From the NCBI RefSeq assembly GCF_000143415.4, contig NW_003314372.1, positions 1 through 10,949 of the forward strand: a DNA stretch of 10,949 nt, read 5' to 3'. The notes under the pieces were generated by a model. The model searched no databases. It saw only the letters and a program-made list of their open reading frames with translations, and was not told the origin of the DNA. The DNA is from Selaginella moellendorffii (taxonomy: Eukaryota > Plantae > Lycopodiophyta). Both the position numbers and the translations under genes were made by a program. Numbering within the stretch: position 1 is the stretch's first letter; the number at the start of each line of letters is the position of its first letter. Below are positions 25 through 10,746 of the stretch, one piece after another.

Positions 25-1650
25 AACTTTGTTAATCGTATTGTTCAATGGGCTTTGAAGCTTTAGACATATGATTTTAATATTGTTCATCGCCCGGGGA
101 GTTCTATGGCTGATGCTAATGCCCTTTTTGGAGCTCCTCTTCCTTCTTCACTCTCTTCTCATGTTTTTGAAGAGCCTGTTGTTTTAGCATCTGTGGATTT
201 TCTAGATAAAGATTCTGTGCCTAGGGAGTTCTATGGCTGATGCTGATGCCCTTTCTCGAGCTCCTCTTCCTTCTCCACTCTCTTCTCATGTTTTTGACCA
301 GCCTGTTGTTTTAGTATCTGTGGATTTTCTTAATGAGGATTCTGTGCCATCGGTAGTTGTTGTACTTGATGTTCAATGTCCACAAGGCATAGAGCAAGAT
401 CTACCTTCTCTTGATGAGGTTTGCAAGGCTCAAAAGATTGAGCCATGGATTCAAAGGCTTCAAGATGGGTTTAAGAATTTTGTATCACTTACTAATGACT
501 TGCCATTCTGGCATTTGCATTCTCAATATCACCTTGAAGATAGCCTTCTTTATTTTGTGGGGATAGATCCTGATGATCATTTATGGCTGGTGGTGCCTTC
601 CATCTTTATTCCACGGTTTCTTCATACCTACCATGATTCTCCTATCCTAGGCGGGCATATGGGACATCGTCATATGACCAAGAAGCTGTGCAAGTCTTTC
701 TATTAGCTAGAGATGCAACATAATGTTATCCGGTATGTGCATAGCTATGTTTGGTGCCAAGCTCATAATACTCCCCTTCATTCTGCAAAAGGATAGTTAG
801 AGTCAATTGCAGTTTCCTGTCCATTTGAGTTAATGGCATTTAATCTTATAGGACCTTTTCCATGATTAACTACTGACAATGAATATGTTATTATTGCTTC
901 TAACTATTTGACTTGTTGGGTGGAAGTTGGTGCTCTTGCTAGCACCTATGCAATTACTGTTGGATACTTCTTCCTCAATCGAGTGGTGTTCTAGTATTCT
1001 TGTCTAGAGCAAATTCTTTCGGATAATGGTCCCGCATTTATGGCTGAAGCATTTCATGTTTTGACCTCTCGGTTGGGGATATACCACACTTTCATGAGTG
1101 TTTATTATCCATAGTCAGATAGTTTGGTGGAACGGCTCGTTTGGCATTCAAAGAAATGATCGCAAAGTATGTGAACTTTTAGCATTCGGATTGGAATGGT
1201 TATTTGCCATTTCTTCAATATGCATATATCACAAGGGTGCAAAGTTCTATTGGTGCTTCACCATATAAACTTTTATATAGTCATAATCTAATATTACTAA
1301 TGGAAATGGGTTTATCTTTGCGATTGCCACGAGCTATTGATGCTAGGTCGTGGGATCAGTATTTGATGAGCTTTCTTCCACTTATCCAAAAAGAGTTTGT
1401 TGAACACTTAAGCCAGATACAATTGGGACAATAACGGCATTACAACTCCCATCATCATTCACCTGCAGAGTACAAAGTGGATGACTTGGTGTTAGTCTAT
1501 TTTCCATATCTTATGGTACATGATTTATCTAAAGGGCTCCATGCTCAGTGGAAAGGACCATTGTGGCAAGTTGGATCACAAGTTTATAAGGTTGGACATG
1601 ACATCTAGCAAGCCGATCCTCCAGAAATTGTGCGTAGTGGTTGAAACACT
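25..1650 (+). mobile_element. Degenerate Ty3/gypsy LTR-retrotransposon pol remnant (RNase H C-terminus, integrase Zn-finger, integrase core, GPY/F tail)
   Basis: Manual translation gives RIVQWALKL*TYDFNIVHRPG..ADALSR (RNase H end), YHDSPILGGHMG..FY*..YVHSYVWCQ (HHCC-like), PFELMAFNLIGPFP, ILSDNGPAF, YP*SDSLVER, LPFLQYAY..SIGASPYKLLY and QWKGP. Many in-frame stops and frameshifts. Confidence 0.93.
97..350 (+). repeat. Imperfect 127-bp tandem duplication inside the pol remnant
   Basis: gggagttctatggctgatgct...gattctgtgcc occurs at 97-223 and again at 224-350 with scattered substitutions. Confidence 0.9.
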
Positions 1651-1790: not shown

Positions 1791-3062
1791 TCCAAGTGTA
1801 TGGCTACAATATTGTATATTATAATTAGCATAGTGGGATTTTGGTAGCTGTTAAATTGGTTGGCAAAGTTCTTTCTTTCCTTTCAATTTAGCTTTGATCC
1901 ATGCATGTTTCTATTGCTAGACAACTGATACAAACAAACTTGTCGACGAATGCTTGTAGTCTTGTGCCTCTCCTGAATGTTGCCTCACTGTGTAAGAAGA
2001 AATCATGCTTCTTTGCTTCATTTATAACCAAAAATTCATTCAAAGACCAATGCCCCTGATTTCCAATTGGTTTCAGAAGCTTTGGTGGAGTGGGAGTAGT
2101 AAAATTCCCCTTGCTGAATTGAGAACCATCATACAGAATCTTGCTGACATTGAGTGGAGAACATGATCTCCAAGTCATTTGGCTGCTGCTCTCCCATTTT
2201 GCTCAAAACCCTAAAACCAAGAATTGACACATCAGCAATAGTGGCAGGAGGAAATAATTGACATATTAGCATTTTAGCCTGCTTGCAAGTTTGACAGTGG
2301 TCAATTGGCTGGGCCGGTTTTGAAAAACATTCAAATTGATTTCATTGTCACAATGCCACTATTAAAAAAATGACAGTGATGGTGACATGTACTAGGGCAA
2401 CATCACTTCAAATTGCTGATGTAGCCATCACAATTTGACTATGATGGTCAGATGTGCAGCATCTATTAAGATGTTGGAAGCTTTAGAATTGCACTTCAAG
2501 CTCCTGTCCTTTCACTTTTTGGGTTGTACGAATCACTCCATGCTGTTGTCCTTTTACTTCTTGGGCTATATGCTTGGGAGTGGTTTCATGCTTTGGTTTT
2601 TTACGCTCTTTAGCTATATGTTTGGGAGTTTCATGAGTGGTTGCTTTTTCTGTAAAAGATTTTTCAGGATGGTGTTCAAGTTGACAACCATGAGATGGTC
2701 ATTTCACCTCTGAATGTGAGTGTGATTTTGTATTTGACACTTGATAGATTTGACAAGCTCCATCCCTTTGTGTGGTGGCCTAAGGCTCTGAACTTGGGTT
2801 CCGCTCCACTGCCCTTGGCCCAGGTGGCTAAGGGTTACAGTTCCGCTTTGTAGTTATCCTATTGTAAAACACCATATAAAAAGTGAAAACCACGTGTGAT
2901 ATATTTGCAAAGCATATATAAAGGACTTTAAAGCTCTTGAGTGGAGAGACAAATACGTAAATCAAGCATGTAAATGAGGTGATGGAGGATGTATTATACT
3001 GTAGCATTCACCAAAAAGAAAATTACATTGATCTTCTAAACAAACTTGATTCAGATGTGGTT

Positions 3063-3366
3063 GATTTGGCCACCATGGTATGTAAGTAAAATTTGCAAGT
3101 AGCTCAAGAAAGGGTATAAAAGCTTGCTAATAAGCATTATTAATTTTGGGAATATAAGGTGGGAGACCTCGTTTTTGTGCAAATAACTTTCCATCAAATG
3201 AGTGATAAACATTTTAGGGTTTTTGCAAAGTGGGATAAGTGATAAACTTTTTCACAAATATATTGGTCCATAAAAAGTGTTGGAGTGCATTAGTTAAGTG
3301 GCTTATCAAGTGTGGCTACCAGCTAAAGTGAAAATTCATCTAATATTATATGTTGGTCAATTGAAG
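3063..3366 (+). mobile_element. Second degenerate Ty3/gypsy integrase C-terminal fragment (GPY/F region)
   Basis: Translates to NLQVAQERV*KLANKH..EYKVGDLVFV, KLFHKYIGP*KVLECIS*VAYQVWLPAKVKIH and VGQLK, matching the KL.PKYIGPY.I..RI..VAY.L.LP...IHPVFHVSQLK consensus. Confidence 0.8.
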
Positions 3367-3751
3367 TGTGTATTATTTTGGAATGAAAGGACCTTCTAGA
3401 TGTATATAGTTATAGATGATGGATCATGAATTTGAGTAAAGTTCCCTAAAAAAGGTGATCATCAATATGACTTATCTTTAAGATAAAGACTTTGTTGGGG
3501 GAAGAATTTTTACATGGTCAATAGGTAAGATTAAGGCATGGTAGAGCTTTTGAGGTAACTTGGGGGTGCTTAAGTGGTAAAGAATTTCAAAATGTTACCC
3601 AAACAAGGTTAAACCTCTTTATATTTGTTATTTAGCTCCAAATCTTAACAATATATCCATCCCTCTCATGCTTCAGGGTGAGCATTGCAAAACTTTCAAA
3701 ATAGTATATAATCTTTAATATTTTCTTATTTGAGACATTTGATTTGAGATG

Positions 3752-4717
3752 TTAATACCAAACAAAGTGACACTCTAAGAGCCAGTGGCAGACTTCTCCC
3801 ACACCAAGGTTCATGTGTAGCACTTTGAATGAAATGTGGGATGGGTCAAAGCCTGAGGTGTCCAAGTGACAAACTGCAGGAACCTCCACAAGCTTGCTGC
3901 AAGATTGTGAATATGGTTTCAGTGTCACCATAAGCGAATTGTATGGCACATGTAGAGTGCATATGGAAATGTCATGGGATGACAAGCTAGAGTCCCATCT
4001 GTAGCAACCATAGCCTTTTCTACCACCTCAAATTCCCCTCCACATCGCTCACAGTGTTTATGACATGCTTCAAATCGGGCCTGCTGACTATTGAAGACGC
4101 TTGCTCCAGGATAGTCTTCACGGAGACATGGCACGCCTTGATCTCGTCCTTGATGCTGGCATCCATAGAACACATGCTCAAGCTGTCCCACATTGCCTTT
4201 GATACAGAAGACTGCATCAGGATTTGCATCGTTGGCAGCAGTCGTGAGAAACCATGGTTCCAAGAACTGGCTCAAGGAGTGAATGCATGAACATACTGGG
4301 AGGAATTGAGTTGTCCCAGAGGAGAGGCGGTGGCAGCCGACAAGCATGTTCATCTGGAAGAAAAGCTTGGGGGATCAAATTCCAAGGTTAGATTCCATTG
4401 CACTCCTGGCAAGGTGATGATGCTGGCGGTGATGATCAATGTGGTGGCACACAGGAAGCCGGCTTTTTTTGCACGACTCGAGTGACATGGTGCCGGAAGC
4501 ATGGATTTCCCGCTTGATGCGCATTTTGGAGGCATCATCCAAGGGCGACAGCCTCTCCAGTATTGAGCCAGGAAGGAGACACCCCTGCGTCAAAAACAAA
4601 AGTAAGAGTTGAGAATGAGCGAGAGCTCATGACTAAGAGGCTCTTGAAGCTGACCACATGATGCACGAGAGAAATCGCAAGCAAGATACGTAGCAAAACG
4701 TGACCGCCAATAGACAT
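3752..4717 (-). pseudogene. BURP-domain protein (stand-alone burpitide cyclase-like), secreted; frameshifted as assembled
   Basis: Exon 1 4717-4655 (MSIGGHVLLRILLAISLVHHV, signal-like), 70-bp intron 4654-4585 (GTCAGC...TTTTTGACGCAG), exon 2 4584-3752. Joined frames give LSPLDD..SCKKAGFLC, LPG..LTLEF..SFLPDEHA, AMWDSLSMC..IKDEIKAC, then ACH-PMTFPYALYM-CH..VEVPAVCH-LDTSGFDPSHISFKVLHMNLGVGEV-CH-WLLECHFV-W. This is the CHx10CHx~24CHx25CHx8W BURP signature. About five frame changes are needed (near 4467, 4362, 4350-4270, 4036, 3938). Confidence 0.93.
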
Positions 4718-4845
4718 GGAAATGATAAAGGCTTTTGCCTACGCCCGTTCATTTATTCAATTTCAAAATAAATGTAGTTTAATAAAGCAGAGTTTCGTTT
4801 AACAGCTTGTTAACAAGAGAAATAGAGATTCGGTAAACAATACAA

Positions 4846-5835
4846 TCAATACTTGAGCATGGACACAAGGATTTTGCGAGTAGGCTCGAGCTTGGAAGTG
4901 GAATGTCTAGAATGGAGCACATGAGAATTTTCCAGCATGAGCACGTCCCCTTGCTCCCACTGCACAGCAAATTGTTTCTCCTGCATGATTTCACAGGCGG
5001 CTTTGATAGCATCCGTGGGCATGGCTGTCTCGTCTCCAAACTCAACATATGGCTCGCTAGAATCACGGACGTAGCTTGATCCAATCGCATTAAACCATGC
5101 CTTCTTGCCGCTTGGAAGCTGCTTGATTGCTGGGCAAGGCCCAAGGTAGAGCTTCACGAGTCCATTCTCAAGCTGCTTTCTCTTGTACCCATTCATATTG
5201 CTGAAGGAAAGAAATCTCATATAACTATCCATTGAAGAAGAATGTGGTGTGGTACCTGCCATATTTTGGTTGCTCCGATGCTGGCACGGTGAAGCAATAT
5301 ATCGCTCCCTTGTCCTCCAAATCTTGAAGAAAGCTAGGGAATTTTTTGGACAAGTCCTCGTAGACATCATCCCCTCTCACAATGCCCGTCGCGCCACCAC
5401 ATCCTTGGGGCGGTGCAACCTCGCAGTAGAAAACAAGCACGTCGGGAATGACGGGCATCTGCAAGGAAAGCTTCACGACTGGCAAATTTCTCTACTGTCC
5501 AAGCTTACATAAGTAATTTCGTTGTGGAAGCCGATTGGAATCTCGAGAGGGAGGTCGTCATTTGCTGTGTAAACCGAGCCTTTGACGTGTTTCCGATCTT
5601 GGCTCCCAAAGTGATCATGCAAGATCTTGTAGTCCAGAGCTTTGATAACTTGATCAAAATCCGCTGCGTCTTTCACCGGAAATCCTCTTAAGAGCAATGC
5701 TCCATTGCGAGCGAGCTTGTCATGGATCCAGGCTTTGTGCTCCTGGACCTTGGATATGAAGTCATCCAGCGGCAACTCTCGTTCGTCTGGATTTGGCACC
5801 ACAACAGCAGGGAACTTACCAAACTGGTCCTCCAT
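4846..5835 (-). CDS. Clavaminate synthase-like / TauD-TfdA family Fe(II)/2-oxoglutarate dioxygenase (At3g21360-like), 3 exons, 294 aa from ATG 5835
   Basis: Exons 5835-5509, 5458-5256 and 5200-4846 splice in frame (885 nt). Introns are 5508-5459 (50 bp, GTAAGC..CCTTGCAG) and 5255-5201 (55 bp, GTACCA..CCTTCAG). Motifs: FPAVV, GALLLRGFPV, VYTAN, IGFHNE (HxE, 5526-5518), FYCEVAP..GG.T, WFN, FGD, WEQGDVLMLEN..VLHSR..R. The true start may be ATG 5894 if one A is missing from the A5 run at 5883-5879. Confidence 0.93.
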
Positions 5836-5861
5836 AAGTGCCGGCGGCGGATGCAAGCGAG

Positions 5862-5881
5862 AAACCCTAACGTTAGGGTTT
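5862..5881. promoter_or_regulatory. Perfect 20-bp palindrome made of two inverted telo-boxes
   Basis: AAACCCTAAC|GTTAGGGTTT. Each arm contains the plant telo-box AAACCCTAA and the centre is AACGTT. Regulatory function is inferred. Confidence 0.6.
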
Positions 5882-6036
5882 TTCCCGTCGCCATGGAGGA
5901 CTAATCGATTGTCAACTCATCAAATTATAATAAAATCATGTCAGAAACCATAAATATCTAGAAAATGTCATCTGAAGCATTCTAGAGCTATATGATTGAT
6001 GCAATACCTTTAAACCTAAAGCCAAGGTAACCAATC

Positions 6037-6046
6037 TATTTATATA
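6037..6046 (-). promoter_or_regulatory. Candidate TATA box for the dioxygenase
   Basis: TATATAAATA on the minus strand about 140 bp upstream of ATG 5894. Confidence 0.35.
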
Positions 6047-6420
6047 TTTTATAATATATGGACTCTGAGTTAGATGCTTTATTTTGTCCACTACTATGTG
6101 AGTTGTTCATATGTCAAGTTGGCACCATGATCCAATGCTAGTTGGTGTGTCATTATTCAACATGTGGTCATTATAGTGTGTCATTATTCATTCTGATACA
6201 GTGGGCCAGGCTCGAAGAAATATTGTCTTTTGATAGAACTTCACGACAAAATTGTTCATTTATCAATGAACAGTTTTCCTCTTTTCCAAAAAGAAAAATA
6301 AAATGAGCTGAATTAGAAGTTTCTTTGTAGTTCAGTAAACATATGCAAACCTAAAGTTGGCCATGAATTGACTTTTCACATGATATTTTACTCTGGTCTT
6401 TGCGCTTTCTGGCACCAACA

Positions 6421-6429
6421 CTATTTAAG
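6421..6429 (+). promoter_or_regulatory. Candidate TATA-like box for the precursor peptide gene
   Basis: CTATTTAAG about 40 bp upstream of ATG 6464, followed by an A/C-rich leader (atacaaaacactcATG). Confidence 0.35.
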
Positions 6430-6463
6430 AAAGTGGCTTCATATTGTAATATACAAAACACTC

Positions 6464-7113
6464 ATGCAATTTCATTTGTTCTAGTGTTGTTCTTCACTGT
6501 AAGTTTTACAGTTGCTCTAGATGCTCTTGACATTGTCTATTTCGTTTTTCAGGCGACTTTAGCTCTCCGAATCGAAATAGATGCTGTTGAACAATCAACA
6601 ACGAACCCAACATCTATTCTGAAGGAGGTTACAGAAACGAAGGCTAAAGAAGAGAACACAACTCCAGAACTCAAGCAATCAATCAATCCCGAAGCCCCGT
6701 TATTCTATGCCAAGCAAGCAGTGAATCCCGAAGCCCCCTTACTCTGTGCCAAGCAAGCAGTGAATCCCGAAAGCCTGTTTTTTTATGCCAAGCCAGCAAT
6801 GAATCCCAAGGTCCCCAAGCAAGCAGTGAATCCCGAAAGCCTGTTTTTTTATGCCAAGCCAGCAATGAATCCCACCCCAAGCAAGCAGTGAATCCCGAAG
6901 CCCCCTTATTCTATGCCAAGCAAGCAGTGAATCCCGAAGCCCCCTTACTCTATGCCAAGCAAGCAGTGAATCCCGAAAGCCTGTTTATCTATGCCAAGCC
7001 AGCACTGAATCCCAAGGTTCCCAAGCAAGCAGTGAATCCCGACAGCAATGAATCCTGAGGTCCCCAAACAAGCACTGAATCCTGAGGTCCTGCTTCTCTA
7101 TGCCAAGCAGTGA
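6464..7113 (+). CDS. Secreted multi-core repeat peptide: putative split burpitide (cyclopeptide alkaloid) precursor; frameshifted as assembled
   Basis: Exon 1 6464-6498 M(A)ISFVLVLFFT (ATG is 1 nt out of frame, ATGCA vs ATGGCA). A 54-bp phase-0 intron 6499-6552 (GTAAGT..TTTTTCAG) follows. Exon 2 gives ATLA-LRIEID.., an acidic leader, then repeats AVNPE-xxxxY-AKQ ending at TGA 7111-7113. It is interrupted by a 4-bp deletion at 6874/5 and an inferred 23-bp deletion at 7042/3. Confidence 0.85.
6673..7110 (+). repeat. Coding tandem repeat with 39-bp core-bearing units and 27-bp coreless units
   Basis: Constant AAGCAAGCAGTGAATCCCGAA flanks variable 15-bp cassettes at 6694, 6733, 6772, 6838, 6900, 6939, 6978 and 7087. 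Unit lengths are multiples of 3. Confidence 0.95.
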
Positions 7114-10100
7114 GTATGAATGTATGTGAAACTGGATTTCTTTTTCGTGTGTGTGTAACCACCAACGTCCTGAAGTTTCAAAATAAAAATGATATTATGA
7201 AATATTTCGAATGGGGTTGAGGCTGTCAACTTTATAAGACCAACTTTAGCAAACTCTAAATCCAGATGTATGATATATTAGTTAATTGTCGACAGTATGT
7301 AAGATGATATTTTTTGGTATCTTTTTGCTAAAGGAATCCCAATGGAAATGAAAATAGCATAACTTAAGCTGAAAGGCATGTAATTAAAGTGTGATGAGTC
7401 AAATAATGATGGAGGTGTGGAAGTATCAGTAATGAATTGTAAAACTTGACAATTATGAAACAACTAAGCAAAAGGTGTAACACAATTGATTGAATTAGTA
7501 AAAGTTAACTACCCAAGACTTTTTATTAGGATAAAAAAGTTAAATATATATCCCACGAGGGGATAAATTGTTTATGTTGTGATATAGTAAGTCAAATGTC
7601 ATAAAGGGAAATGCTCATTTTCAAAGATTTTCATTATTAGGACACCTAAACACTCTAAAACAACAAAAAGTGGTGTTTAGTGTTATAAGGGCATTAAATA
7701 ACGCCCAAGGGACTAAGTCCCTAACGAATAATGGATAAAAAGTGTTATTCAATATTTAAAGTTGCGGAGACAAGAAAAATCCATCTATCTGGACAAAGCC
7801 AAAAAAGATTTTGGCAAGGCTAGTGACAGGTATATAAAGATATGTAAGTAACAATGTTAATCCCAATGTGTGGGATTACAAGGTGAGCATATCCGAATTG
7901 AGGAACCACTTCCAAAGGTATCGCATAGGTTCATCCCTAAGAATACTTATTAAGGCATGATAGAAAGTGCAAAGTTATCCTCTTAGTCTAGAGGAGAATA
8001 ACTGAAAGAAATGTTTAAGACCAAAAACAAGTAGTAAAGGGATAAAATTGAACTATAGTAATCGAAAAATAACCGAGAGTGGTTATGCAAGTTGGGAGTG
8101 AAGAATTAAGTGGGTGCTCGAAAGTGTTGTTATTGTCAACCATAATGCCATGGAAAGTTTAAGATATGGAATTGTTCATGTTAAACTGTATAGCAATTAA
8201 AAAGCTTGCAAAAGGAGAGGCTTTAGGAAATTAAAGGACAGAGTCCCTTCAAAGTTCTCAAAGACAATTTTAGGTAGATTAGTACCTAAAAAGACAAATA
8301 TAAATAGTTCATAGAATGCAAGAAATCAAAGTGGTACAGTAGAAGTGTGGTTATTGAAGCTTGCCATGAGGTGAGGCTATAAGGTTGAGGAAATAGTTTT
8401 TGAGTGTTCAAAGAATGGCTTTGAATGAAACTCAATAGTTAAGGACTTTCATGCTTATGCATGAAACCATGTTACACTAATCAGATGGCTTGCTAAGCGA
8501 GATTAGCAAATCAGGGGAACAAAGACCCTAGTTGAAGGTGTTGACTTCAAAAGGGGTGGCCCATAGGGCCAAGTATAGACAAATCCATGCATGATCATAA
8601 ATTTGTTAAGTGAGAAGATTTGGTAGTTTAGAGGAAGTAAGTTCTTAAGTTGTGATCCATAAACCGTTTTAGGTATAAGTTGGTGCATCAATATAGGGAA
8701 TCATGCCAGGCATCATATGTGATGCCATTCGTAGATGCATATATGGAGGTTAAATTTGAGTCCCAACCCTATAGTGCTTGGGTTCGAGTCTTAAATCAAT
8801 AGGGCATAGTAATGGTTTGGAATATGAGGACACTTATTTTTCGGTGGTCATAGACTTTTAATAAAGAGACTAGTTTGGGCACACCGCCAAACAAGGGATG
8901 CCCCAAAGTTGTGATGCACAGTTAGATTGCTTAATGTGAAAGCTTAGCATATATAACTTAAACACCTTGATGCAAGTGGCACCAAGGACGTGGTGAATGA
9001 GATAGGGACATCTAGTCTTAGTTGTTATGGACCCTTGGTTGAAAGGGCTGGCTTGCGTGCACTGGCAAGTGTGAAGAATGCCCCCGAGGTCATAGTCAAC
9101 AAGTTAAAGGTCTGGAAGACCTAATGCCTATTAGTAAACCTGTTAAGGTGTCAAAGTTAAATCACTAGATTATCTTATGGCTAAACAAGGATAAAGTCCT
9201 TGTGAATTTTCTAGTTCAAAGTGTTGATTTGAACTATTGGTAATCGTATGGCTTGGTCAAAGTGACCAAGTGAGAAAGACACCTAAAGGAACTGAATTGT
9301 AACAATACAATAGTATGGTGAGTCCAAGAAAATAGTCCCTAAGAAAAAGACTTATGGGTAGGTCTCATGAATAGAGCCCAAATGTTAAAGATACCTATTA
9401 TGGGTAAACACCCTCTAGACTTGGCAAAGCAGAGCTTTTGCTATGAAATGAAAAAGATATCTCAAGGATGGAGGTAGTGATTTTATGTTGCATGGTGCAA
9501 CAATCAAAGGATAGGAGCAAAAGATTAGTGGCTGAGATTAGGCCATAGAAATCATTAGAAGGAATCTAAATAGAAAATTTAAGCAATGCTAATGAATTGT
9601 GGGAAAATAAATATGTTTCCAAGGATGAATTCCTAAATGCTCCAATTTGGCGAAGGTAAAAGCTTTAAAATATATGAAGTGGTAAAGTAGCTAAATGATA
9701 GGGCCATGGATAGGCCTAGTATGAGTTATGGATAAGTGGAACTTAGTGCTAACGGTGGCATAAAATGAAAGAGAAGATGATGATGGCCTCTAGTAAAGAA
9801 CTTCCTATAACCGGTGCAATACAAAGTGTCAGACACACATAGGAAATTGACTCGAGATGTCAATATTAAAGCTCTAGAGTGCAATGGTTATGTTAGTAGA
9901 AGCTGAGACTACTCTTGAATGACTAGTAAAATTGAAAACAAGTTTAGCATGAACTAAATAAACAAAAAAAAGGGGGGGAAGGACCACCATCAGTGGTCTA
10001 ATGAGTCTTTAAGTTGGAAAGACTATGCTCTTTAGAGGATAGACAAAGCATAGTGAGCCTTTGGTGTCAAACCATTGATAGATATTGGTTGGGTGCCAAA

Positions 10101-10423: not shown

Positions 10424-10746
10424 GAGATGGAGTCTAAGATGGACCTAAGATGGACCCGAGATGGAGTCTAAGATGGACCCGAGATGGAGTCTGAGATGCA
10501 TCCGAGATGGACCCAAGATGGACCCGAAATGGAGTTCGAGATGGAGCCGGAGATGGACCCGAGATGAAGTCCAAGATGGAGTCTGAGTGGACCTGAGATG
10601 GAGTTTGAGATGGACTTGAGATGGAGTCTAAGATGGACCTGAGATGGAGTCCGAGATGGACTCGAGATGAACCCGTGATAGAGACCGAGACTAGAACTAA
10701 GACCGAGTTTGAGTCCAAGTTTGAGTCCGAGTCCGAGTCCAAATCT
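10424..10746 (+). repeat. Minisatellite of 11/12-bp units (RAGATGGACCY / GAGATGGAGTCY) grading into GAGTCC-like hexamers
   Basis: About 20 units over 10424-10675, then gagacc gagact agaact aagacc gagttt gagtcc aagttt gagtcc gagtcc gagtcc over 10681-10746. Confidence 0.9.

What the first reader, a model, noticed from the sequence alone, without database searches (positions are those of the whole stretch)
4846..5894. CAS-like dioxygenase as candidate C-terminal Tyr oxidative decarboxylase (styrylamine formation)
Seen: the HxE...H iron triad (HNE, LHSR) and downstream Arg are intact. The substrate-side segments differ from the conserved plant At3g21360 type as I recall it (ILHDHFGSQDR vs LPYVGGAAPR, HNEITY vs HHEMAQ, WFNAIGSSY vs WFNSMVAAY). 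Known: classical cyclopeptide alkaloids end in a p-hydroxystyrylamine formed by decarboxylative desaturation of Tyr. Bacterial TauD-fold enzymes IsnB, AmbI3 and WelI3 perform decarboxylation-assisted desaturation on Tyr/Trp isonitriles. I recall a non-heme Fe/2OG enzyme being reported for this step in Ziziphus, but its subfamily needs checking. Inference: this is a neofunctionalised paralogue that performs that step, or a beta-hydroxylation, on the clustered cores, possibly by convergent recruitment.
Basis: partly seen in the sequence, partly recalled or inferred. Interest (0 to 1): 0.8.

Follow-up and report, generated by a model that had tools for sequence, protein, structure and literature searches.

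The report
Spikemoss TauD-type oxygenase beside dead cyclase
This is a real, transcribed and correctly spliced iron/2-oxoglutarate oxygenase gene of the spikemoss Selaginella moellendorffii, lying between a peptide-precursor gene and a broken peptide-cyclase gene. Nothing beyond its position links it to the peptides, and nothing supports the proposed tyrosine-decarboxylase role.

Summary
The gene is real. It lies on the minus strand, runs from ATG 5835 to stop 4846, and has three exons and two GT-AG introns of 50 and 55 nt. RNA contigs from three studies remove exactly these introns. The product has 294 aa and is 97.6% identical to SELMODRAFT_425605 of Selaginella moellendorffii.

It belongs to the At3g21360/SqoD branch of TauD-fold Fe/2OG oxygenases. 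The iron triad H104/E106/H273 and the 2OG residues R81/T133/R285 are intact. It is not the housekeeping orthologue. It is one of at least six paralogues, in a Selaginella-only clade.

They map to the sulfoquinovose-binding Gln and Trp of SqoD. Changes specific to this gene are a polar lid loop and loss of 16 codons that hold a ≥90%-conserved Trp.

The context weakens the interpretation:
- The BURP cyclase next door is frameshifted in both haplotypes and barely transcribed.
- The precursor is truncated by a frameshift.
- No other lycophyte paralogue examined lies near a BURP gene.
- Known Selaginella cyclopeptide alkaloids keep their C-terminal carboxylate.
- The known decarboxylase, ZjuDC, appears to be of the DOXC class.

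The decarboxylase reading is unsupported (about 7%). A tailoring role of some kind remains possible (about 25–30%). The scan had already noted this three-gene locus on the same DNA.

The parts
5509..5835 (-). Dioxygenase exon 1 (codons 1-109, start ATG 5835-5833). It holds the lid loop ..HDHFGSQDR.. (R81), and iron ligands H104 (5526-5524) and E106 (5520-5518) in HNEITY. The 5' UTR reaches at least 5884.
   Evidence: Translation; RNA contigs; Pfam TauD; mapping to SqoD/At3g21360
5459..5508 (-). Intron 1, 50 nt, GTAAGC..TTGCAG, phase 0 after HNEITY. The position is shared with all four paralogue genes examined.
   Evidence: Joint 5458/5509 in RNA runs X4, X5 and X12 but not in DNA run X1; paralogue gene structures
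5256..5458 (-). Dioxygenase exon 2 (codons 110-176 plus 2 nt). It holds the GGATG motif with 2OG-binding T133.
5201..5255 (-). Intron 2, 55 nt, GTACCA..CTTCAG. The acceptor is at the paralogues' position, but the donor lies 16 codons upstream of theirs. The first 30 nt read R-Y-H-T-T-F-F-F-N-G-stop in the exon-2 frame, weakly like the family's GW.S.F.T.D segment, so this may be former exon.
   Evidence: Joint 5200/5256 in three RNA runs; alignment; intron positions
4846..5200 (-). Dioxygenase exon 3 (last nt of codon 177 to the stop at 4848-4846). It holds WFNAIGSSY, H273 (4914-4912), R275 and R285 (4878-4876). The 3' UTR reaches about 4752.
3752..4717 (-). Neighbour: BURP-domain cyclase pseudogene. 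Domain positions run on across three frames with no room for introns. One frameshift just after the second Cys-His motif is shared by both haplotypes, and two further 1-nt deletions (about 4254 and 4039) are specific to the window's haplotype.
   Evidence: Pfam profile coordinates; haplotype alignment; L001 ORFs; RNA runs hold at most 0.20 of its words and it has no RNA contig
5851..6891 (+). Neighbour: multi-core precursor gene, head-to-head with the dioxygenase. By analogy with RefSeq protein LOC112341075 the exons are 5851-5886, 6430-6498 and 6553-6891. Its ATG is 15 nt from the dioxygenase ATG, on the other strand. Cores are PLFY, PLLC, LFFY, LFFY. A stop at 6889-6891 follows a frameshift shared by both haplotypes.
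   Evidence: P0167; sequence; RNA contigs over 6779-7183 in X5 only
6892..7058 (+). Out-of-frame continuation of the core array (PLFY, PLLY, LFIY). It is the second copy of a 206-nt tandem unit, a length that is not a multiple of 3.

Best explanation
Shown:
- This is an expressed, correctly spliced 294-aa Fe(II)/2-oxoglutarate oxygenase of the TauD fold, in the At3g21360/SqoD branch.
- It is a lineage-specific paralogue in Selaginella moellendorffii.
- It keeps the complete catalytic core: iron ligands H104, E106 and H273, and 2OG ligands R81, T133 and R285.
- It lacks the two side chains that bind sulfoquinovose in SqoD. Gln120 is replaced by Tyr109, and the Trp253 segment is deleted.
- It has a more polar lid loop and has lost 16 codons at the end of exon 2.

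Inferred mechanism:
- It most likely binds Fe(II) and 2OG and forms an Fe(IV)-oxo species.
- It then abstracts a hydrogen from an sp3 C-H of a substrate other than a sulfosugar. Hydroxylation is the default outcome.

Context:
- It sits inside a degenerating split-burpitide locus. It is head-to-head with a multi-core xLxY/xFxY precursor and 130 nt upstream of a BURP cyclase that is now a pseudogene.
- I put about 25-30% on the neighbouring cores being, or having been, its substrate. That rests on position alone.
- C-terminal decarboxylative desaturation is only a small part of that share.
For: Gene model and expression:
- Splicing and expression are seen in three RNA studies, and about 0.7 of the gene's words are held by 17 RNA runs.
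- The model is 97.6% identical to SELMODRAFT_425605.

Family and fold:
- Pfam TauD matches at E 1e-30.
- PDB sequence hits are 1Y0Z at E 7e-44 and SqoD (9YUT) at E 4e-30.
- The AF2 model has pLDDT 91.5 and TM-score 0.85 to 1Y0Z.
- 24 of the 25 invariant or ≥90%-conserved family positions are kept, including all catalytic ones.

Paralogue status and residue mapping:
- The gene falls in a Selaginella-only clade (SH-aLRT 96) inside a lycophyte/fern clade (97).
- Residues were mapped onto SqoD using PMC12951627.

Neighbours:
- describe the BURP and precursor genes.
Against: - No assay was possible, so activity is inferred.
- The lost segment contains a Trp conserved in at least 90% of 61 family members. 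The enzyme may be impaired.
- Haplotype pN/pS is 0.64 (7 nonsynonymous, 3 synonymous). That fits relaxed constraint, though other paralogues show similar allelic protein divergence.
- In runs X4 and X12 the oxygenase contig is present without any precursor or BURP contig, so co-expression is not evident.
- None of the seven other lycophyte paralogue loci examined has BURP-like or precursor-like sequence within ±10 kb.
Confidence: 0.55

Rival explanations
1. The enzyme carries out decarboxylation-assisted desaturation of the C-terminal Tyr of the clustered cores, giving a p-hydroxystyrylamine. It would have been recruited convergently with ZjuDC and would work like IsnB/PvcB.
For: - It lies next to a precursor whose cores end in Tyr.
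- TauD-fold enzymes can do this chemistry on Tyr isonitrile, as IsnB and PvcB do (cited).
- After 1Y0Z and SqoD, IsnB is the next best PDB hit of the family profile, at E 5e-13 over the N-terminal half only.
Against: - From the enzymes its authors compare it with, ZjuDC is of the DOXC class, and it is unclustered.
- IsnB and PvcB align at TM 0.57 and 14-16% identity, the same level as TmpA, BBOX, KDO1, AtsK and TauD.
- Selanines from S. kraussiana keep the C-terminal carboxylate, and decarboxylation is described as typical of Rhamnaceae.
- The local cyclase is a pseudogene.
Confidence: 0.07
2. The enzyme is an active oxygenase on an unrelated small molecule, as the other lycophyte paralogues presumably are. 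Its place between BURP and the precursor is an accident of a very gene-dense genome.
For: - The family has expanded to at least six loci in S. moellendorffii, and the other loci examined sit among unrelated genes.
- The oxygenase contig occurs in runs without precursor or BURP contigs.
- The protein has no N-terminal signal peptide, whereas BURP and the precursor have hydrophobic N-termini.
- Neighbouring loci show genes every 1-3 kb.
Against: - It lies between the two parts of a known two-gene cassette. Its start codon is 15 nt from the precursor's, on the other strand, and its stop is 130 nt from the BURP start.
- It has gene-specific changes in the lid loop over the active site.
Confidence: 0.35
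3. The gene is a transcribed relic. The whole three-gene locus is decaying, and the oxygenase is crippled by losing the conserved Trp-helix segment. It still has an ORF only because the damage was rescued by a cryptic splice donor.
For: - BURP carries a shared frameshift plus haplotype-specific ones.
- The precursor carries a shared truncating frameshift. Each haplotype also has a different dead core: PLLC in the window and a broken LFF core in L001.
- The oxygenase has lost 16 codons, including a ≥90%-conserved Trp, and the start of intron 2 looks like former exon.
- pN/pS is 0.64, and an omega of 0.1 is rejected at p = 0.005.
Against: - All catalytic and 24 of 25 conserved positions are kept despite only about 43% identity to the nearest paralogue.
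- There are no indels in 885 nt of CDS, against three in 966 nt of BURP.
- Both splice sites are conserved in both haplotypes.
- Expression is strong and widespread.
- The predicted fold is confident.
- Allelic protein divergence (2.4%) lies within the range of the paralogues (0.6-4.5%).
Confidence: 0.25

Closest known systems
At3g21360 (PDB 1Y0Z), clavaminate-synthase-like protein of Arabidopsis, function unknown
   Same: It shares the TauD fold and the same branch: E 7e-44, model TM-score 0.85, about 33% identity. The HxE...H triad and 2OG-binding Arg/Thr are the same.
   Different: - HHEMAQ has become HNEITY.
- GGAAPR has become FGSQDR.
- The YTGW.D.RN segment is absent.
- 16 further residues (GW.S.F...AE..A) are missing.
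- It belongs to a lycophyte-specific expanded clade, not the slowly evolving canonical clade.
SqoD, sulfoquinovose dioxygenase of Marinobacterium aestuarii (PDB 9YUT; PMC12951627)
   Same: It is the closest relative with a known reaction (E 4e-30 to P0001; family profile E 2e-122). The iron triad and the lid-loop Arg (R92 = R81 here) are the same.
   Different: Sulfonate-binding Gln120 is Tyr109 here, Met118 is Ile107, and the segment holding sugar-binding Trp253 is deleted. A sulfosugar substrate is therefore unlikely. Canonical plant At3g21360 proteins keep both residues.
ZjuDC, Fe/2OG oxidative decarboxylase of cyclopeptide alkaloids from Ziziphus jujuba (PMC12871766)
   Same: Both are soluble Fe/2OG-dependent enzymes of a plant that makes, or encodes, Tyr-ether cyclopeptide precursors.
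   Different: Its authors compare ZjuDC with DAO/GA2ox, DPS and H6H, so I infer it is of the DOXC class. It is on a different chromosome from its cyclase and precursor.
IsnB / PvcB / AmbI3, TauD-fold decarboxylating desaturases of bacterial isonitrile pathways
   Same: They share the superfamily and fold and act on a Tyr-derived carboxylate.
   Different: The relationship is only at superfamily level: TM 0.57, 14-16% identity, and a profile E of 5e-13 (IsnB) or 3e-6 (PvcB). Their substrate is a free amino-acid derivative, not a peptide.
Split burpitide cassette (precursor + BURP cyclase, e.g. ArbA2/ArbB2 of Coffea; Lima et al. 2023, PMC10107690)
   Same: A separate multi-core precursor with Tyr-terminated 4-residue cores is co-localised with a stand-alone BURP gene.
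   Different: - The host is a lycophyte, where only the fused type (SkrBURP) has been described.
- A third gene sits between the two.
- The BURP gene is frameshifted.
- The precursor matches no Pfam family and has no relative other than its own allele.

Membership tests
TauD/TfdA Fe(II)/2OG oxygenase superfamily (PF02668) | Significant match to the family profile | tested here: met
   Each exon piece scores above the gathering score. Full-length P0001 scores E 1.2e-30, 107.8 bits.
TauD/TfdA Fe(II)/2OG oxygenase superfamily (PF02668) | 2-His-1-carboxylate triad and 2OG-binding Arg/Thr | tested here: met
   H104, E106, H273, R81, T133 and R285 fall in invariant or ≥90%-conserved columns of 61 relatives. 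They align with the SqoD and At3g21360 residues.
TauD/TfdA Fe(II)/2OG oxygenase superfamily (PF02668) | Double-stranded beta-helix fold of the TauD type | tested here: met
   The AF2 model has pLDDT 91.5 and pTM 0.91. Foldseek gives TM 0.85 to 1Y0Z and 262 PDB matches at E ≤ 0.001; every match listed is a TauD-fold enzyme.
At3g21360/SqoD branch | Closest sequence and tree placement with At3g21360-type proteins | tested here: met
   It lies inside the plant clade, in a lycophyte/fern subclade with SH-aLRT 97.
Sulfoquinovose dioxygenase (SqoD function) | Sulfonate-binding Gln120 and sugar-binding Trp253 | tested here: not met
   Tyr109 stands in place of the Gln, and the Trp253 segment is deleted.
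Single-copy housekeeping At3g21360 orthologue | One copy per genome, canonical motifs and a short branch | tested here: not met
   S. moellendorffii has at least six loci. The stem branch is 1.19, against 0.16-0.26 in the canonical clade.
Cyclopeptide-alkaloid C-terminal decarboxylase (ZjuDC type) | Homology to ZjuDC | tested here: inconclusive
   The ZjuDC sequence is not held here. The paper's comparators (DAO/GA2ox, DPS, H6H) place it in the DOXC class, a different fold family.
Cyclopeptide-alkaloid C-terminal decarboxylase (ZjuDC type) | Conversion of the C-terminal Tyr to a styrylamine (-46 Da) | not testable with these tools
   This needs an enzyme assay. The literature reports C-terminal COOH in Selaginella selanines.
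IsnB/PvcB decarboxylating desaturases | Specific relationship beyond superfamily level | tested here: not met
   TM 0.57 and 14-16% identity, ranked among TmpA, BBOX, KDO1, AtsK and TauD. Profile E is 5e-13 for IsnB and 3e-6 for PvcB, against 6e-142 for 1Y0Z.
Burpitide biosynthetic gene cluster (tailoring member) | Co-localisation with precursor and BURP cyclase | tested here: met
   BURP lies at 3752-4717 (-) and the precursor at 5851-6891 (+), with the oxygenase between them.
Burpitide biosynthetic gene cluster (tailoring member) | Intact, expressed cyclase in the cluster | tested here: not met
   One frameshift is shared by both haplotypes and two more occur in the window. RNA runs hold at most 0.20 of the BURP words.
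Burpitide biosynthetic gene cluster (tailoring member) | Co-expression with the precursor | tested here: inconclusive
   X5 holds both. X4 and X12 hold only the oxygenase. These are contigs, not counts.
Burpitide biosynthetic gene cluster (tailoring member) | Association repeated in relatives or paralogous loci | tested here: not met
   Seven other lycophyte paralogue loci have no BURP-like or precursor-like sequence within ±10 kb. The precursor has no relative other than its allele.

The most novel reading that the evidence does not exclude
The enzyme is, or until recently was, a tailoring oxygenase for the neighbouring Tyr-ether cyclopeptide cores. It would hydroxylate or desaturate xLxY/xFxY peptides. 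That would make it the first TauD-fold enzyme in plant RiPP tailoring. The locus would be the first burpitide cluster to carry its own tailoring gene, caught in a lycophyte while it decays.
Probability: 0.25. Interest if true: 0.75.

Novelty: new member of a known kind. Interest (0 to 1): 0.38.

Why it matters
Three things would follow if the enzyme acts on the cores:
- A second, unrelated Fe/2OG fold would join plant peptide tailoring.
- A compact biocatalyst for cyclopeptide alkaloids would become available.
- Burpitide genes would be shown to form true clusters with tailoring enzymes as early as the lycophytes.

As it stands, the value is more modest:
- The gene model is corrected and backed by RNA.
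- The At3g21360 family is shown to have expanded in Selaginella and to have lost the sulfoquinovose-binding residues there. Canonical seed-plant members keep them, which hints that At3g21360 itself may be a plant sulfoquinovose dioxygenase.
- The locus is a documented example of a RiPP-like cluster in decay.

Tried and rejected
1. Reading the frame changes in the oxygenase as pseudogene frameshifts. Rejected: three RNA studies splice out exactly 50 and 55 nt and restore one ORF.
2. The ATG at 5894 as the start codon. Rejected: it is in the wrong frame and outside the RNA contigs.
3. A sulfoquinovose dioxygenase function. Rejected on the binding residues.
4. A specific kinship with IsnB/PvcB. 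Rejected.
5. A search for the same association at other loci. Four other S. moellendorffii loci and three Diphasiastrum loci have no BURP or precursor nearby. The Adiantum locus returned no DNA.
6. A search for relatives of the precursor, to find sister clusters. Only its own allele was found.
7. Haplotype pN/pS as a test of constraint. The result was inconclusive: 0.64 from 10 substitutions, with allelic protein divergence similar in the paralogues.
8. A 32-nt "intron" that would rescue the last BURP frameshift. Rejected: it is too short, it would cut the CH2-CH3 spacing to 13 residues instead of 23-27, and the skipped stretch still matches the BURP profile in the other frame.
9. P0005 and P0003 could not be located on contigs.
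10. The bacterial-type promoter scan is not meaningful for a plant.
Full report
**Observation**

The minus strand between 4846 and about 5890 carries a TauD/TfdA-type gene. A six-frame listing shows the homologous sequence spread over three frames.

Reading the DNA gave this model:
- The start is ATG 5835-5833.
- Exon 1 runs to 5509 and ends ..HNEITY.
- Intron 1 is 50 nt, GTAAGC..TTGCAG (5508-5459).
- Exon 2 is 5458-5256.
- Intron 2 is 55 nt, GTACCA..CTTCAG (5255-5201).
- Exon 3 runs to the stop at 4848-4846.

Logan contigs of three RNA studies (X4, X5, X12) each contain one contig that skips exactly 5459-5508 and 5201-5255. The DNA run X1 is colinear with the window. Seventeen RNA runs hold about 0.7 of the words of this stretch.

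The gene is therefore expressed and spliced into one 294-codon ORF.

**Organism and identity**

The spliced product differs at 7 of 294 residues from SELMODRAFT_425605 of Selaginella moellendorffii (P0001). The GenBank scaffold region L001 aligns with window 2829-7013 at about 95% identity, so it is the allelic haplotype. The very short introns fit this lycophyte.

**Family**

- Pfam TauD (PF02668) matches at E 1.2e-30.
- Among solved structures the best sequence hits are At3g21360 (1Y0Z, E 7e-44) and 9YUT (E 4e-30).
- 9YUT is the sulfoquinovose dioxygenase SqoD. Its authors name At3g21360 as its closest structural homologue.
- An AF2 model built on 61 relatives is confident (pLDDT 91.5) and superposes on 1Y0Z at TM 0.85.
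- PvcB and IsnB appear only at TM 0.57 and 14-16% identity, level with TmpA, BBOX, KDO1, AtsK and TauD.
- A profile of the family gives 1Y0Z at 6e-142, SqoD at 2e-122, IsnB at 5e-13 and clavaminate synthase at 1e-10.
- In the 61-sequence alignment the protein keeps 24 of 25 invariant or ≥90%-conserved positions. These include H104, E106, H273, R81, T133, R275 and R285.

**Paralogue or orthologue**

S. moellendorffii has at least six such loci: P0001, P0002/P0005, P0003, P0011, P0013 and P0020. P0020 also has a tandem TauD-family neighbour.

In a maximum-likelihood tree of 60 proteins the window gene falls in a Selaginella-only clade with P0013, P0002 and P0003 (SH-aLRT 96). That clade sits inside a lycophyte/fern clade (97) and is separate from the slowly evolving canonical clade of seed plants.

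Its stem branch (1.19) is longer than those of P0002 and P0003. It is similar to those of P0013 (1.38) and P0011 (1.19), and shorter than that of P0020 (1.83).

**What the changed motifs mean**

SqoD binds the sulfonate with Gln120 and backbone amides of Ala89 and Met118. It binds the sugar with Trp253 and the carbonyl of Ala185.

By alignment, canonical plant proteins keep both side chains (HHEMAQ, YTGW). All lycophyte paralogues have HNE..Y and lack the YTGW segment.

Changes specific to the window gene are:
- Ile107-Thr108 in place of Met-Ala.
- A polar lid loop (FGSQDR against AGAAAR).
- A three-residue insert after HSRH.
- A missing stretch of 16 residues.

**The missing stretch**

All four other paralogue genes examined have the same two intron positions. 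In the window gene the acceptor of intron 2 is at the homologous place, but the donor lies 16 codons further upstream in the alignment.

The first 30 nt of the intron read RYHTTFFFNG-stop in the exon-2 frame. This weakly resembles the family's GW.S.F.T.D segment.

I infer that a deletion destroyed the old donor and a cryptic one is now used. This is inference, because the similarity is too short to be significant. The lost segment holds a Trp conserved in at least 90% of the family.

**Neighbours**

*BURP gene.* Downstream on the same strand lies a BURP-domain gene (3752-4717). Pfam profile positions 57-112, 119-153 and 149-215 are found in three different frames. The junctions leave no room for introns.

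The allele L001 has one extra base at window positions 4254 and 4039. It therefore has a continuous 123-codon ORF there. Both haplotypes share the shift just after the second Cys-His motif.

The best RNA run holds only 0.20 of the BURP words and most hold none. No RNA contig covered it.

*Precursor gene.* Upstream and divergent lies the precursor. The RefSeq protein of the allele (P0167) begins MQARNPNVRVFP. In the window this is encoded at 5851-5886, only 15 nt from the oxygenase start codon and antisense to its 5' UTR.

The window allele encodes cores PLFY, PLLC, LFFY and LFFY, then stops after a frameshift shared by both haplotypes. Three further cores follow out of frame. The array is a 206-nt tandem unit. 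Each haplotype has a different dead core. The precursor has no relative in the protein collection other than its allele.

**Does the association recur?**

No BURP-like or precursor-like sequence lies within ±10 kb of four other S. moellendorffii loci (P0002, P0013, P0011 and P0020 with its tandem neighbour) or of three Diphasiastrum loci.

**Constraint**

Between haplotypes the CDS has 10 substitutions (7 nonsynonymous, 3 synonymous; pN/pS 0.64) and no indel. BURP has 14 substitutions and 3 indels. An omega of 0.1 is rejected (p = 0.005), but 0.2-1 is not.

Allelic protein divergence (2.4%) lies inside the range of the paralogues (0.6-4.5%). This test is inconclusive.

**Literature**

- The styrylamine of jujube cyclopeptide alkaloids is made by ZjuDC, an Fe/2OG enzyme. 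Its authors compare it with DAO/GA2ox, DPS and H6H, so I infer it is of the DOXC class. It lies on a different chromosome from its cyclase and precursor.
- Selanines of S. kraussiana and arabipeptin keep a C-terminal carboxylate.
- Oxidative decarboxylation is described as typical of Rhamnaceae.
- The split-cassette paper mentions neither Selaginella nor a dioxygenase.

**Verdict**

The gene is a catalytically complete, transcribed, lineage-specific paralogue whose pocket no longer fits a sulfosugar.

Its only tie to the peptides is position. That tie is tight: the gene lies between the two cassette genes, head-to-head with the precursor. But the locus is degenerate, and the association is neither repeated elsewhere nor backed by co-expression.

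My estimates:
- About 25-30% that the cores are or were its substrate.
- About 7% that the reaction is decarboxylative desaturation.
- About 35% that it has an unrelated substrate.
- About 25% that it is a relic.

These readings overlap, so the figures are not meant to sum to one.

Noticed in passing
window 3752-4717 (-) and L001 11119-12081 (+): The BURP cyclase gene is a pseudogene. One frameshift after the second Cys-His motif is shared by both haplotypes. Two extra 1-nt deletions (about 4254 and 4039) occur only in the window's haplotype, and a 5-nt indel at 4400-4404 also differs. There is almost no RNA support.
   Followed up: yes
window 5833-5886: The start codons of the oxygenase (5835, minus strand) and the precursor (5851, plus strand) are 15 nt apart. 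Precursor exon 1, as in RefSeq LOC112341075, is therefore antisense to the oxygenase 5' UTR. The first precursor intron would be 543 nt, which is long for this genome. No RNA contig confirmed it.
   Followed up: partly
window 6672-7058: The core array is a tandem duplication of a 206-nt unit (94% identical). That length is not a multiple of three, so the second copy (PLFY, PLLY, LFIY) is out of frame behind a stop at 6889-6891. Each haplotype carries a different dead core: PLLC here and a broken LFF core in L001.
   Followed up: partly
alignment (not in the window): Canonical seed-plant At3g21360-type proteins keep the sulfoquinovose-binding Gln (HHEMAQ) and Trp (YTGW) of bacterial SqoD. At3g21360 may therefore be a plant sulfoquinovose dioxygenase. 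No S. moellendorffii member among the hits keeps them.
   Followed up: partly
window 97-348 and 233-1434: There is a 127-nt tandem duplication, and ORFs with a weak integrase zinc-binding (Integrase_H2C2) match. This looks like a retrotransposon remnant. It aligns with L001 at only about 87-89% identity.
   Followed up: no
window 10424-10742: A minisatellite with units of about 23, 57 and 80 nt (GAGATGGA..-type) produces overlapping Ser/Leu/Gly-rich ORFs on both strands.
   Followed up: no
L005 10001-12345: Paralogue P0020 has a second TauD-family gene (326 aa) tail-to-tail right beside it, showing local tandem expansion of the family.
   Followed up: no
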